The position numbers were made by a program, and so were the translations under genes. Below, piece by piece: positions 57,101-60,535 of a stretch of DNA of 64,000 bases. Under the pieces are notes generated by a model. The model saw only the letters and a list, made by a program, of their open reading frames with translations. It searched no databases and had not been told where the DNA came from. Where the stretch lies: the NCBI GenBank assembly GCA_026936335.1, contig JAPMXV010000049.1, positions 372,001 through 436,000 on the forward strand. Direction: 5' to 3'. Within the stretch, counting starts at the first letter, position 1. Every line of letters starts with the position of its first letter. Source of the stretch: Mantamonas sphyraenae STR306 (taxonomy: Eukaryota; Protista; CRuMs).

Positions 57101-60100
57101 ATGCAGACCTGCCCACGCCTTCGTCGCCTGCCGTAAACACACCTGCTCGCGCGCCGTCTGCAGGCGACCGCAAGCTGTTCTGGTCGAACAGACGCGACGA
57201 AAACAGTGTGCGAGGAACCAATTCCACCTCTTCCTCGCCCGTCAGACGCATGCGATCCTTCTGCGGCTGCTGCTGCTGCCCACCGTTGGCGTCCTGTGCG
57301 TTGTTTTTGCCGCCTGTGGTGGTGGTGTCGTCCACGGTGCCGGCGGCGGCGGCGTCTCCTGTCTTGTTGCTGCTGTTGCTGCTGCGCAGTTTCTTGACCA
57401 GCGAGTACTTGCTAAAGTGTTCCACCTGGAACATGACGGAGCCTTCGTCCCGGTTGTACTCCAGGAATTCGGCGGGCATCTGTTGGATGTCACAACGCAG
57501 CTCCTCTTCGTACTGGTCCAGCTGGGCGTCGTCTGTCACACGCTCGCCCGTGTCGTTGTCCATGAGGGCGAAATTGTACAGTTTGATGTGTGCACGCTTG
57601 TTCAAGCCCTGACCCTGTGGCGGACTGCTGCGTTCCATGCTGCTGGGATACACCTCCACCTCGCCCACGCTGATCTGCACAATCTCGTCCAGGTTCAGAC
57701 CACGTACGTCGGTGTAGCCCAGAAAGGTGACGCTGCCCACGTTGGCTCGCCCCACCGTGAAGTTCTGGATGCGTTGCAGCTCCTGGCTGCTCATGGCTTG
57801 CAGATCGTCGATGTCCGGGATGGTGTAGTAGCCAGCCTTGGTCAGGTTGGGTGGCGATTGTTGCTGCTGCACGTGGCTGTACAGAGCCCCCTTGGATGCA
57901 CTGTCCATGTTCTCACGGAAGAACGTCGAGTAGTCCGAGTACATGCGCACCCCACTCCCATCCCCGGGGTCAAACACGCCCACGCGTGACTGAGCACGAG
58001 GCTTCCACACCCCGTCGTCCGTCCTGTCCCTCTGTGCGCCGTTGTTGCTGATGTGATTGCCCACACCTTCGCCAAAGCCGCTGGTGTCCATCGCGTTCGG
58101 TTGCTGCTGCCCCTGTTGTTGCCCGCTCACTTCCACCGCACTTGTGTCCAACAATCCGTCCGTGTCCTCTGCATCTGCATAATCCAAGACCTTGGGCCTG
58201 GACGACGCGGGTGTGGAGGCGGTGAGGCGTGAGCTGCGCAGCATGCGTGCACTTCCTCCGCTTGCACCCACGCCTGCTCCGCTGTTGTCCATGCGTCGCA
58301 GTTCGCTCTTGAGACGCGACTCCTCCTGGTCCTCCAGCCCCTGCATGCGGATCTTGCTCTGGTCCAGCATCAGGTTGCGCACGTGTCCTCGTGGCCCATA
58401 CTCGTCCTTCAGCAACGGATCCACCGTGGGATCAAATGCAGCCACACTGCGTGGCAGCGTGCCACGTGCCGCCTGTCGCTTCAGCGTCCCCGACAGGGTC
58501 TTTGGCCTGTGGCTGTCGCTGCCCAACATGCTCGTGCGCCCCGGGCCCTTGTCGTCCTTCCCTGGTGGGTCTGGCAGCTTGCTGGGAAAGGTGCCGTATG
58601 GGTTCACATTCACCTCTTCGTGCTTGATGATCCTCGGTGGCGACCTTCGCTTGGGTGACTCCTTTCGCCTCCTGCTGCTTCGTGAGCTGCGCGAACTACG
58701 CCTGCCCCAACGCGACGAGCCACGATCGCTGTCGCTCTCGCTGCCACTTTCACTGTCGCTGCCTGAGCGACGCCGCGACGAACGGCGGCTGCCAAAGCCT
58801 CCACGACGCGAGGAACGCGAACGTGAGCGCGAGGAACGTTCCCGGGAACGCGAGCGAGAACGGGAACGCGAGCCACGTCGACTGCTGCCAAAGCGACTGC
58901 CACTGCGACTGCTGCTGCGTCCACGGCTGCCAAAGCGACTGCTGCCTCCGCTGCTGCCACGTCGTCCAAACCCTGAGCCGCGACGAGAGCTTCCGCGGTC
59001 GTCGTCGCTTCCGCTTCCGTCGCTGCCGCTGCCGCTGCCTCGTCGTCCACGACCAAACCGTGATCCGGAACGAGACGAAGAGCCACGTCGGCTGCCAAAC
59101 GCACTGCCTCCACTGCGTGACGAACCACCGCCGAAACGAGAGCCACTGCGAGACGACGAGCGTCCACCACTGCCCCCTCCAAACCGAGAGCCACTGCGCG
59201 ACGACGATCGCCCGCTGCTGCCTCCAAATCGTGATCCGCTGCGTGACGAGGAGCGTCCACGTCCAAACCGGCCCCCACCTCGGTCGTCCTGTGAGTCTTC
59301 TTCATCGCTACCGCTGCGGCTGCGGCTGTTGCGACGGCTGCCAAAGCGCGAGCCGCTGCCGCTGCCTCCTCCGAACCGCGACCCACTGCGTGAGGAGCCG
59401 CCTCCGAAACGGGAGCCACTGCGTGAGGAGCCGCCACCAAAGCGAGAGCCACTGCGAGAGGAGCCACGGTCGTCCTTGCTGTCGTCGTCCACCAGTCCTC
59501 GATCCAACTGGTAGTCCTCCCAACGCCACTGCAGAGCACTCTTCTCCTCCATGTCTTTCATGATGCACAAGTGTTCGTTGAGCACAGGCACATTCTTGCC
59601 CTTGTGTTGTTCCGTACCCTGTGTGTGGGGGGGGGGGGGGGGTTGGGTGGGTGGGTGGGTGTGAGAGGAGTGGAGAGAGAGAAAGAGGAGGATCAGGCTC
59701 AATGCACTGCGGTCAAAACGCACCTGTGTGGCCTTGTATCGCACATCCAACGTGCCAAACATGTCATTGTTGCGTCCTCCGCGTCCTCCACGAGAGTCTG
59801 CGTGTGTCAACGGTGATGCATCCGTGTCAGTGTGCCTTTCTGAGTGCGAAAAGTGCCGCGGAAAGCGCGCGCGCGAAACCCACTTCGACGTCCACCGCTT
59901 CCTCCATCGTTGCCCCATTTGCCTCCCGAGCTGTTGCGTCCACCACGAGAGAATGCTGAGCCTATGGTGTGTATGTGTGTGTGTGTGTGTGTGTGTGCGT
60001 GTGTGTGTCAGCGTGGTCGTGTTGGGGGTGTGAGTCCATTCCCCAGCAAGGACCAAAACATGCGACGCACCTCCGCTGTTCCTGCGTCCGCTTCCTCCAC

Positions 60101-60535
60101 CACTGTTGCCAAACCGTCCTCCCGATCCACTGCGTCCACTGCTGCTGCGTCCTCCTCCACTGCGTGATGATCCCGCTCGGAAGGAGCCCCCACTGCGGCT
60201 GTTTCCACCTCCGTTGCCTCCAAAGCGGCCTGGGTGTGCCGATCAGGCATGTTTGGCCGATTGCGTCTGACGTGTCAGCCTTGTGTGCGTTTTGTGGTCG
60301 CTCCCTTGTGCATGTGCACTCATTGCATGTGTACATGGGCCAATGAACGTGCATGCACAAAGTGTCTCCAAGGTGCATGTTGTGACAAAGGTGTTTGTGG
60401 AATCAACTCACCGCCCCCTCCACTGTTGCTGCGTCCTCCACTGTTGCTACGTCCTCCGCGGCTCCTGCTTCTGCTGTTGCTCCTGCCCCCGCCTCCGGAA
60501 CGGCGGCTTCCGCTTCTGCTGAACCGACCGGCCAT
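54192..60535 (-). CDS. NUP98: Nucleoporin Nup98-Nup96 precursor with an atypical RS/RFG repeat domain, 5 exons
   Basis: Exons 60535-60412, 60229-60071, ~59961-59884, 59797-~59725 and ~59618-54192. GLEBS-like 'KSALQWRWEDYQ', 'NPYG', autoprotease 'YYTIP...FQVEHFSKY' (HFS 57411-57419), Nup96 'LDWKRSLGLHLWF'. Confidence 0.93.

What the first reader, a model, noticed from the sequence alone, without database searches (positions are those of the whole stretch)
58630..60535. Nup98 with a re-invented FG domain: basic 'RFG' repeats and an RS tract instead of GLFG
Seen: the gene has the GLEBS-like motif, the HFS autoprotease and Nup96, yet its N-terminal disordered region has no GLFG. It has about 17 FG motifs, about 13 of them RFG, often in an 11-aa unit SSRSGSRFGGG, set in Arg/Ser/Gly spacers. 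It ends in an SR-protein-like tract (RSRSRSRSRERSSRSRSRS) with interspersed acidic patches. Known: Nup98 FG domains are characteristically charge-depleted, which makes them cohesive and forms the pore permeability barrier; variant motifs exist (e.g. NIFN in Tetrahymena micronuclear Nup98) but I know of no RS-type version. Inference: this lineage may build its barrier with Arg-Phe cation-pi interactions, regulate it by SR-kinase phosphorylation or Arg methylation, or bind RNA directly at the pore. This is my best candidate for an undescribed system.
Basis: partly seen in the sequence, partly recalled or inferred. Interest (0 to 1): 0.88.

Follow-up and report, generated by a model that had tools for sequence, protein, structure and literature searches.

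The report
Arginine-rich RFG nuclear pore barrier protein
The only Nup98 gene of the deep-branching protist Mantamonas sphyraenae, like its other pore-lining proteins, replaces the uncharged, greasy GLFG repeats thought to be universal with highly charged arginine/serine-rich "RFG" repeats, so this organism probably builds its nuclear pore filter on different chemistry.

Summary
Confirmed, and wider than reported. On the minus strand at 54192-60535 lies a five-exon Nup98-Nup96 gene (Pfam S59 autopeptidase 1.5e-37, Nup96 4.8e-60, HFS site, GLEBS-like motif). Its 473-aa N-terminus has exactly 17 FG, 13 RFG and no GLFG. Composition is S 28%, G 25%, R 21%, with net charge +76. Outside the GLEBS motif, 29.8% of residues are charged, against about 2.5% in 666 published Nup98 FG domains.

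- Three tandem SSRSGSRFGGG units differ by 16 synonymous and 0 nonsynonymous changes, so the peptide is under selection.
- It is the genome's only S59 copy, and I found no GLFG-type paralogue.
- In 106 Nup98 homologues with an N-terminal region of at least 200 aa, those rich in FG have 0.5-4% Arg there, and no N-terminal region has more than one RFG.
- The genome's Nup62, Nup58, Nup54 and a large FG protein on contig 51 also use RFG/KFG in charged spacers. Pooled, 37 of 49 FG are RFG, against 4 of 62 in background frames. The shift is therefore pore-wide, not specific to Nup98.

Other first readers of this scan had already flagged RFG repeats in other candidate nucleoporins of this genome. The genome matches the published Mantamonas sphyraenae assembly.

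Not tested: transcripts (no RNA run was listed), relatives (none in any database searched) and the biophysical mechanism. New variant of a known kind; interest 0.8.

The parts
60412..60535 (-). Exon 1: start codon (ATG at 60533-60535) and the first Ser/Arg/Gly-rich stretch (MAGRFSRSGSRRSGGGGRSNSRSRSRGG...)
   Evidence: Followed by a GTGAGT donor; phase consistent with exon 2. The ATG of a divergent gene lies 51 bp upstream.
60071..60229 (-). Exon 2: two RFG motifs in Gly/Ser/Arg/Asn spacers
   Evidence: AG acceptor and GTGCGT donor; only this frame is open and in phase.
59884..59961 (-). Exon 3: Ser/Gly/Arg-rich stretch with no FG (SAFSRGGRNSSGG...)
   Evidence: AG acceptor and GTGGGT donor, in phase.
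59724..59797 (-). Exon 4: RGG-type stretch, then the first half of the GLEBS-like motif (NNDMFGTLDVRYKATQ, 59724-59771)
   Evidence: AG acceptor and GTGCGT donor, in phase; aligns with the GLEBS region of homologues.
59496..59618 (-). Start of exon 5: second half of the GLEBS-like (Rae1/Gle2-binding) motif, ...NEHLCIMKDMEEKSALQWRWEDYQLDRG
   Evidence: Pfam PF21240 E=0.0049, 17.3 bits, below the 27-bit cut-off, profile positions 14-39; motif-level alignment to seven homologues.
58791..59462 (-). RFG repeat array: 14 FG (11 RFG), consensus SSRSGSRFGG, with three exact tandem 11-aa units at 59364-59462
   Evidence: The tandem units show 16 synonymous and 0 nonsynonymous differences.
58803..58871 (-). 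RS tract SRSRSRSRSRERSSRSRSRSSRR inside the repeat array
   Evidence: In the best 50-aa window, 36 of 50 residues lie in RS/SR dipeptides.
58725..58760 (-). Largest acidic/Ser patch, SDSESGSESDSD; three others lie at 59469-59489, 59283-59309 and 58998-59024
   Evidence: charge map.
58635..58718 (-). Basic Ser/Arg tail that closes the low-complexity region (SSRWGRRSSRSSRSSRRRKESPKRRSPP)
57837..58634 (-). Non-repetitive linker between the repeat domain and the autopeptidase
   Evidence: Same uninterrupted open frame. Three homologues align partly over it.
57399..57836 (-). Nup98 S59 autoproteolytic / pore-anchoring domain; the HFS cleavage site is at 57411-57419 (predicted cut between F880 and S881)
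   Evidence: Pfam PF04096 1.5e-37; only copy in the genome; HFSKYS located.
54192..57413 (-). Nup96 moiety up to the stop codon (54192-54194); the Pfam Nup96 domain is at 54804-55634
   Evidence: Pfam PF12110 4.8e-60; open frame.

Best explanation
This is the FG domain of the single Nup98-Nup96 gene of Mantamonas sphyraenae. SHOWN: it is coding sequence, continuous with the GLEBS motif, the S59 autopeptidase and Nup96. Its repeat peptide is under purifying selection. It is one case of a genome-wide switch of FG-nucleoporin repeats to [S/G]-R-F-G set in Ser/Arg/Gly or Lys/Asp/Glu spacers, also seen in Nup62, Nup58, Nup54 and a large FG protein on contig 51. No canonical uncharged GLFG nucleoporin was found. 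INFERRED from what is established for the Nup98 family: the precursor cuts itself at HF|S, the 880-aa Nup98 docks in the pore through its C-terminal domain, and it binds Rae1 through the GLEBS motif. INFERRED from composition: the roughly 16 Phe residues, each next to Arg, are the contact points for transport receptors. Cohesion and selectivity would come from Arg-Phe (cation-pi and related) contacts, from Arg pairing with the interspersed acidic or possibly phosphorylated Ser patches, and from a large net positive charge (+76) that favours acidic transport receptors. Hydrophobic collapse of charge-free GLFG repeats would play little part. The Ser/Arg context makes the barrier a plausible target for phospho-regulation.
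For: Family: PF04096 1.5e-37, PF12110 4.8e-60, HFSKYS, GLEBS alignment and a weak Pfam hit. Gene model: GT..AG introns, consistent phases, no stops; one open frame runs from the GLEBS motif through the RFG region to Nup96. Selection: three tandem units with 16 synonymous differences over 29.3 sites and 0 nonsynonymous over 69.7 (Fisher 7e-11). Eight identical SRSGSRFG peptides use both AGY and TCN Ser codons. Motif specificity: 13 of 16 FG preceded by R, binomial 1.6e-6. Single copy with no GLFG alternative. Outlier status: among 106 homologues the FG-rich ones have N-terminal Arg of 0.5-4%, and no N-terminal region has more than one RFG; R is below 0.5% at position -1 of 3851 FG motifs. Published values are 2.5 +/- 0.4% charged residues in 666 Nup98 FG domains and FILVM 13-17% (PMC4283134), against 29.8% and 5.3% here. 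Pore-wide pattern: Nup62, Nup54, Nup58 at both ends, its C-terminal RFG tail in the same open frame as the Pfam-matched coiled coil, and the contig 51 protein with 15 RFG and 2 KFG among 18 FG. Pooled, 37 of 49 FG are RFG against 4 of 62 in background frames. Arg-Phe and Arg-FG-phase affinity is documented (PMC9918544).
Against: There is no transcript or protein evidence: no RNA run was listed, so the four introns and the translation of the repeat region are predictions. FG density is low (1 per 26 aa) and hydrophobicity is low. By published rules this predicts poor cohesion; the highly charged Nsp1 274-601 subdomain does not phase-separate (PMC4283134). A net charge of +76 would oppose self-association unless a counter-ion is present. 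No relative could be examined, so lineage-wide conservation is unknown. Phosphorylation, methylation and receptor binding are untested.
Confidence: 0.7

Rival explanations
1. The domain is a non-cohesive, highly charged polyelectrolyte brush, comparable to the charged FxFG part of yeast Nsp1. The Mantamonas barrier would then work by entropic exclusion and electrostatics, or through resident transport receptors, and not by any condensed FG phase.
For: 29.8% charged residues, FILVM 5.3%, one FG per 26 aa, net charge +76. The charged Nsp1 274-601 subdomain fails to phase-separate (PMC4283134). The Nup62 and Nup58 N-termini here carry KD-rich spacers.
Against: Arg plus aromatic residues with blocks of opposite charge drive condensation in other disordered proteins (Ddx4-type; cited in PMC9918544). 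The strict Arg-Phe adjacency (13 of 16) suggests that a selected contact motif matters, not charge alone. No cohesive FG nucleoporin was found that could supply a barrier otherwise.
Confidence: 0.2
2. The RS/RGG-like region is mainly an RNA- or mRNP-handling module, or a phospho-switch, at the pore (SR-protein-like, acting with Rae1 in mRNA export or in mitotic pore disassembly). Its FG function would be vestigial.
For: In the best 50-aa window, 36 of 50 residues lie in RS/SR dipeptides; there are 90 RS/SR dipeptides, 40 RG/GR dipeptides and six RGG. The domain flanks the Rae1-binding GLEBS motif.
Against: No RRM or other RNA-binding domain was found. The same RFG motif sits exactly where FG domains sit in Nup62, Nup54 and Nup58, which have no known RNA role. 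Phe is kept in every repeat unit.
Confidence: 0.1
3. Gene-model artefact: part of the repeat ORF is intronic or untranslated, and the mature Nup98 has a much shorter or different N-terminus.
For: No RNA evidence could be obtained. Low-complexity DNA keeps several frames open on both strands.
Against: The frame is open for 5.4 kb from the GLEBS motif to Nup96. Differences among the repeat units are exclusively synonymous in this frame. The upstream exons have canonical splice sites and matching phases. The Nup58 C-terminal RFG tail needs no splicing assumption.
Confidence: 0.05
4. Neutral low-complexity drift: replication slippage and GC-biased mutation produced Arg/Ser/Gly-rich repeats with no special function.
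For: The genome is 59% GC. Tandem repeats with periods of 33, 42 and 45 nt are present.
Against: Identical peptides are encoded by diverged codons, including switches between the AGY and TCN Ser codon families. The same motif recurs independently in at least five pore proteins and is rare in background frames (4 of 62 FG).
Confidence: 0.05

Closest known systems
Canonical Nup98 / Nup100 / Nup116 / Nup145N GLFG domains (human, yeast, plant and others)
   Same: Same gene architecture: N-terminal FG region interrupted by a GLEBS motif, a linker, the S59 autopeptidase with HFS, and fused Nup96. It is the single-copy orthologue.
   Different: No GLFG. 29.8% charged residues against about 2.5%. FILVM 5.3% against 13-17%. 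One FG per 26 aa against one per 12. 416 aa of repeat region against 500-700. Arg precedes 13 of 16 FG against under 0.5% in homologues.
Tetrahymena micronuclear MicNup98 with NIFN repeats (from my own knowledge; Iwamoto et al.)
   Same: A natural Nup98 whose repeat motif departs from GLFG.
   Different: In Tetrahymena it is a nucleus-specific paralogue that coexists with GLFG MacNup98, and its repeats are uncharged. Here the variant is the only Nup98, it is polycationic, and the other FG nucleoporins share it.
Charged FxFG subdomain of S. cerevisiae Nsp1 (residues 274-601)
   Same: FG motifs separated by highly charged spacers. The Mantamonas Nup62 and Nup58 N-termini (KD-rich spacers) resemble it most.
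   Different: Nsp1 uses FSFG with mixed K/E/D spacers, and yeast keeps cohesive GLFG nucleoporins alongside it. Here the motif is RFG, the Nup98 spacers are Ser/Arg/Gly with a strong net positive charge, and no cohesive partner was found.
RGG/GAR and FG/RG condensate domains (Ddx4 N-terminus, fibrillarin GAR, LAF-1, FUS RGG)
   Same: Arg, Gly and Phe-rich disordered sequence with alternating charge blocks. Arg-aromatic contacts are their known cohesion mode (cited in PMC9918544).
   Different: Those are RNA-granule or nucleolar proteins and are not pore-anchored. Here the sequence is much richer in Ser (32%), the motif is SRFG and not RGGF, and the domain occupies the FG-domain position of a nucleoporin.
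RS domains of SR proteins
   Same: A tract of consecutive RS/SR dipeptides; 72% of the residues in the best 50-aa window lie in such dipeptides.
   Different: No RRM. The RS tract is a small part of an RFG repeat array. SR-kinase targeting is untested.

Membership tests
Nup98-Nup96 precursor | S59 autoproteolytic domain (Pfam PF04096) | tested here: met
   E=1.5e-37, 129.4 bits against a cut-off of 28.4, full profile 2-148.
Nup98-Nup96 precursor | Catalytic HFS tripeptide at the end of the domain | tested here: met
   VEHFSKYS at 57411-57419. Cleavage itself was not tested.
Nup98-Nup96 precursor | Nup96 domain fused downstream (PF12110) | tested here: met
   E=4.8e-60, 203.5 bits, in the same open frame.
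Nup98-Nup96 precursor | GLEBS (Rae1/Gle2-binding) motif inside the N-terminal repeat region | tested here: inconclusive
   The exon-5 half gives PF21240 E=0.0049, 17.3 bits, below the 27-bit cut-off. The motif is split by an intron, and the joined form was not searched. The alignment keeps FGT, GT[DE], H.CI, MK..E.KS and R.EDYQ..R. Rae1 binding was not tested.
Canonical Nup98 FG domain (features listed as conserved in all clades, PMC9918544) | Prevalence of GLFG motifs | tested here: not met
   0 GLFG; 13 of 17 FG are RFG.
Canonical Nup98 FG domain (features listed as conserved in all clades, PMC9918544) | Extreme depletion of charged residues (about 2.5%) | tested here: not met
   29.8% D+E+K+R outside the GLEBS motif; net charge +76 over the 473 aa.
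Canonical Nup98 FG domain (features listed as conserved in all clades, PMC9918544) | About one FG per 12 residues and FILVM 13-17% | tested here: not met
   One FG per 26 residues; FILVM 5.3%.
Canonical Nup98 FG domain (features listed as conserved in all clades, PMC9918544) | Length 500-700 residues | tested here: not met
   473 aa including the GLEBS motif, 416 aa without it.
Canonical Nup98 FG domain (features listed as conserved in all clades, PMC9918544) | Spontaneous phase separation into a phase selective for transport receptors | not testable with these tools
   Needs the recombinant protein.
SR protein | RS domain of at least 50 aa with more than 40% RS content (criterion recalled from memory) | tested here: met
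   In the best 50-aa window, 36 of 50 residues lie in RS/SR dipeptides.
SR protein | One or two N-terminal RRM domains | tested here: not met
   Pfam finds only PF04096 and PF12110 in exon 5, and nothing in the repeat region taken alone. This is therefore not an SR protein.
RGG/GAR domain | Clustered RGG/RG repeats, often spaced by Phe | tested here: inconclusive
   Six RGG and 40 RG/GR dipeptides in 416 aa, but the dominant unit is SRSGSRFGG, which is Ser-rich and not the RGGF pattern.

The most novel reading that the evidence does not exclude
Mantamonas, and perhaps all CRuMs, runs nucleocytoplasmic transport through a permeability barrier made entirely of polycationic RFG/RS-type domains. 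This would be a second physico-chemical solution, with Arg-Phe contacts and electrostatic coacervation, phospho-Ser, acidic blocks or RNA acting as counter-ion. It would show that the charge-free hydrophobic FG phase is not a universal requirement of eukaryotic nuclear pores.
Probability: 0.35. Interest if true: 0.9.

Novelty: new variant of a known kind. Interest (0 to 1): 0.8.

Why it matters
[quoted passage not shown] They underpin the 'selective phase' model of the pore barrier. Here a free-living, cultured, deep-branching eukaryote with a high-quality genome breaks all four rules in its only Nup98, and its Nup62, Nup58 and Nup54 show the same change. That makes it a natural experiment. 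It allows direct tests of whether a cohesive hydrophobic FG phase is needed, how much of the selectivity can be carried by Arg-Phe contacts and charge, and whether transport receptors have co-evolved. It also bears on what the barrier of the last eukaryotic common ancestor looked like.

Tried and rejected
- **Close relatives:**
  - The word-indexed search with the autopeptidase-Nup96 part gave at best 29% identity.
  - The exhaustive search of representatives with linker plus autopeptidase gave at best 48%, over the autopeptidase only.
  - The search with the repeat region gave nothing.
  - The ESM Atlas gave no usable hit.
  - The metagenome scan gave no relative.
  - The question whether relatives share the trait therefore stays open.
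- **Search for a canonical FG nucleoporin in the genome:**
  - PF13634 at E<=10 hit only two loci. One is an LF-acidic repeat protein on contig 6, which I read as FAM21-like and not a nucleoporin. The other is a SAM-domain protein with SAFGG repeats on contig 39.
  - The double-GLFG DNA pattern gave 5 matches against 17 for the reversed control.
  - A canonical FG domain (P0022:1-230) found nothing, which is weak evidence because there was no positive control.
- **Second GLEBS motif:** the only other weak hit (contig 24) lies in an implausible low-complexity frame.
- **Nup214 and Nup153:** the PF16755 hits on contigs 67 and 2 are NACHT-WD40 proteins. The protein with five RanBP-type zinc ribbons on contig 51 has no FG. 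Neither nucleoporin was identified.
- **Opposite-strand ORFs** over the repeat (58192-59514 and 58637-59563, plus strand) were rejected as low-complexity artefacts, because the repeat differences are synonymous only in the minus frame.
- **Joined protein:** the joined five-exon protein was used only inside scripts for counting. It was not sent to any search or folding tool; searches were made exon by exon, by reference.
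Full report
**What is there**

On the minus strand, one open frame of 1954 codons (54192-60056) runs without a stop from a GLEBS-like motif through the repeat region to the end of the gene. 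Pfam places a Nup98 S59 autopeptidase at 57399-57836 (PF04096, E=1.5e-37). It places a Nup96 domain at 54804-55634 (PF12110, E=4.8e-60). The catalytic HFS lies at 57411-57419.

Upstream, four short exons continue the frame to an ATG at 60535: 60412-60535, 60071-60229, 59884-59961 and 59724-59797. Every intron is GT..AG, the phases fit, and the joined frame has no stop. The predicted precursor is 1953 aa, with cleavage expected between F880 and S881.

The joined sequence was used only inside scripts for counting. All searches were made exon by exon, by reference, and the joined step was left out.

**Check of the observation**

- The 473 N-terminal residues hold 17 FG, 13 of them RFG, with no GLFG and no FxFG.
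- Composition is S 28.3%, G 25.4%, R 21.1%. There are 100 R and 9 K against 22 D and 11 E, giving net charge +76.
- The unit SSRSGSRFGGG is repeated three times in exact tandem (59364-59462). SRSGSRFG occurs eight times.
- The RS tract is at 58803-58871, and four acidic patches interrupt the array.
- Outside the GLEBS motif, Arg precedes 13 of 16 FG where 23% is expected from composition (binomial 1.6e-6). RFG is therefore a motif and not a by-product of Arg richness.

**Is it real coding sequence?**

No RNA run was listed for this stretch, so the evidence is indirect, but it is strong.

- The three tandem units encode identical peptides yet differ at 16 synonymous positions (29.3 sites summed over pairs) and at none of 69.7 nonsynonymous sites (Fisher 7e-11).
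- The eight SRSGSRFG copies differ on average at 6.3 of 24 nucleotides. They use both the AGY and the TCN Ser codon families.
- This pattern marks an old repeat kept at the peptide level in this frame. It is not what recent slippage or an opposite-strand ORF would give.

**Which organism**

G000 has 25,061,354 bases in 78 contigs. The FALCON assembly of Mantamonas sphyraenae is reported as 25.06 Mb in 78 contigs at 59.19% GC (PMC10492846). Local GC in the window is 55-64%. Mantamonas belongs to CRuMs, a deep branch near Amorphea.

**How unusual it is**

Schmidt and Goerlich surveyed 666 Nup98 FG domains. They found a median of 2.5 +/- 0.4% charged residues, with FILVM at 13-17% in their ten test cases (PMC4283134). 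Ng et al. list four features as conserved across all eukaryotic clades (PMC9918544):

| Feature | Reported as conserved | Here |
|---|---|---|
| Length | 500-700 residues | 416 aa outside the GLEBS motif |
| Charged residues | extreme selection against (about 2.5%) | 29.8% |
| FG density | one per 12 residues | one per 26 |
| Dominant motif | GLFG | none; RFG instead |
| FILVM | 13-17% | 5.3% |

In my own sample of 106 Nup98 homologues with an N-terminal region of at least 200 aa, those rich in FG have 0.5-4% Arg there. No N-terminal region has more than one RFG. Across their 3851 FG motifs, Arg is below 0.5% at position -1.

**No canonical copy elsewhere**

- The S59 domain occurs once in the genome.
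- The Nucleoporin_FG profile at E<=10 hit only two loci. One is an LF-acidic repeat protein that I read as FAM21-like. The other is a SAM-domain protein with uncharged SAFGG repeats.
- A double-GLFG DNA pattern gave fewer matches than its reversed control.
- A canonical FG domain used as query found nothing. This is weak evidence because there was no positive control.
- No credible second GLEBS motif exists.

**The shift is pore-wide**

- **Nup62** (Nsp1_C, E=2.3e-15). The exon just upstream joins in frame through one GT..AG intron. It carries SRFG, SRFG, RSFG, RKFG and RKFG in Ser-rich and KD-rich spacers.
- **Nup54** (E=6.9e-30). It starts MTSRFGRSSRSSSGGSSGSRFGSSRSSSGGSGSGSRFG.... Its exact introns are undetermined.
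- **Nup58** (PF15967, 39 bits in the genome scan; 27.8 bits, below the 32.3-bit cut-off, on the single open frame). It has such repeats on both sides of its coiled coil, as vertebrate Nup58 does. The C-terminal tail, with three SRFG, lies in the same open frame as the Pfam match, so no splicing assumption is needed.
- **A protein of at least 772 aa on contig 51.** It gave a weak NUP50-motif match in the genome scan (E=9e-4), which the Pfam scan of its ORF did not reproduce. It has 18 FG, of which 15 are RFG and 2 KFG.

Pooled over these five proteins, 37 of 49 FG are RFG. In long open frames elsewhere in the window the figure is 4 of 62 (Fisher 1.6e-14).

Two ankyrin-repeat paralogues also carry N-terminal RFG/GFG repeat arms. 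Other first readers of this scan independently flagged RFG repeats in a NUP153-like and a POM121-like candidate of this genome. I did not locate those loci myself.

**How it most likely works**

*Shown:* family membership, architecture, single-copy status, peptide-level selection and the genome-wide motif.

*Inferred from what is established for the family:* self-cleavage at HF|S, anchoring through the C-terminal domain, and Rae1 binding through the GLEBS motif. That motif aligns well at motif level with homologues, but its exon-5 half scores only 17.3 bits against a 27-bit Pfam cut-off.

*Inferred from composition:*
- The Phe residues remain the contacts for transport receptors.
- The flanking Arg gives Arg-Phe cohesion of the kind documented for Arg with FG phases and for Ddx4-type condensates (PMC9918544).
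- The acidic patches, or phosphorylated Ser in the RS context, supply counter-charge.
- The large positive charge favours acidic receptors.

The main rival is that such a charged, weakly hydrophobic domain does not condense at all and acts as a brush, as the charged Nsp1 subdomain does in vitro (PMC4283134). An RNA-handling role is less likely, because the same motif sits in Nup62, Nup54 and Nup58. An annotation artefact and neutral drift are both unlikely given the codon evidence.

**Limits**

- No transcript, proteomic or localisation data were available.
- No sequence from any other CRuMs member was reachable.
- Nup214 and Nup153 were not identified.
- The biophysics is untested.

**Verdict**

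I searched the held paper library and found no description of an RFG/RS-type FG domain or of Mantamonas nucleoporins. I rate it a new variant of a known kind, with interest 0.8.

Noticed in passing
window 60536-60586: Only 51 bp separate the Nup98 start codon (60535, minus strand) from the start codon of a divergent gene (60587, plus strand). That gene encodes a protein with a signal-peptide-like start and Kelch-like motifs. The shared promoter and 5' UTR space is extremely compact.
   Followed up: no
window 59621-59661 and 59967-60008: Two of the Nup98 introns contain G-rich (G16, GTGG) and (GT)21 microsatellites. The Nup62 intron (L007 about 1186-1496) has similar GT-rich tracts, so this may be a common intron feature in this genome.
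   Followed up: partly
L022 778-3084 (+) = G000:C55 about 415.5-417.8 kb; L023 3-2150 (-) = G000:C70 about 281.5-283.6 kb: Two paralogous ankyrin-repeat proteins carry N-terminal arms of 15-16 FG (RFG, GFG, SFG) in Ser/Thr/Asn/Lys-rich, 40-aa repeats. They could be new pore-associated or FG-phase client proteins.
   Followed up: partly
L002 4-2517 (+) = G000:C39 about 67.8-70.3 kb: A protein with a SAM domain has about ten uncharged SAFGG repeats in Pro/Ala/Ser spacers. This is the only canonical-looking, charge-poor FG repeat I met in this genome. It is followed by EP repeats and repeated DDSIPPWKREMMKRK units. I found no nucleoporin domain in it.
   Followed up: no
L014 5158-9987 (+) = G000:C6 about 97.2-102.0 kb: A protein of at least 1609 aa is full of LFGG-acidic repeats (SALFGGSDDEE...KKAGKK). 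They resemble the LF-acidic motifs of the WASH-complex subunit FAM21. It is the source of the only GLFG pattern hits in the genome.
   Followed up: no
L044 2817-5618 (-) = G000:C51 about 447.3-450.1 kb: A 934-aa open frame has five RanBP2-type zinc ribbons and no FG repeats. It is not a Nup153.
   Followed up: no
L046/L047 (G000:C67 43898-49999, minus) and L048/L049 (G000:C2 203977-207000, minus): Large NACHT/STAND-type ATPase proteins with long WD40 arrays gave the weak matches to the Nup214 beta-propeller profile. Downstream on contig 67 (36995-40402) lies an 1136-aa protein with a basic, GK-rich tail.
   Followed up: no
window 63168-64000 (-): The C-terminal part of an acetyl-CoA synthetase-like (AMP-forming) enzyme runs off the end of the window.
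   Followed up: no
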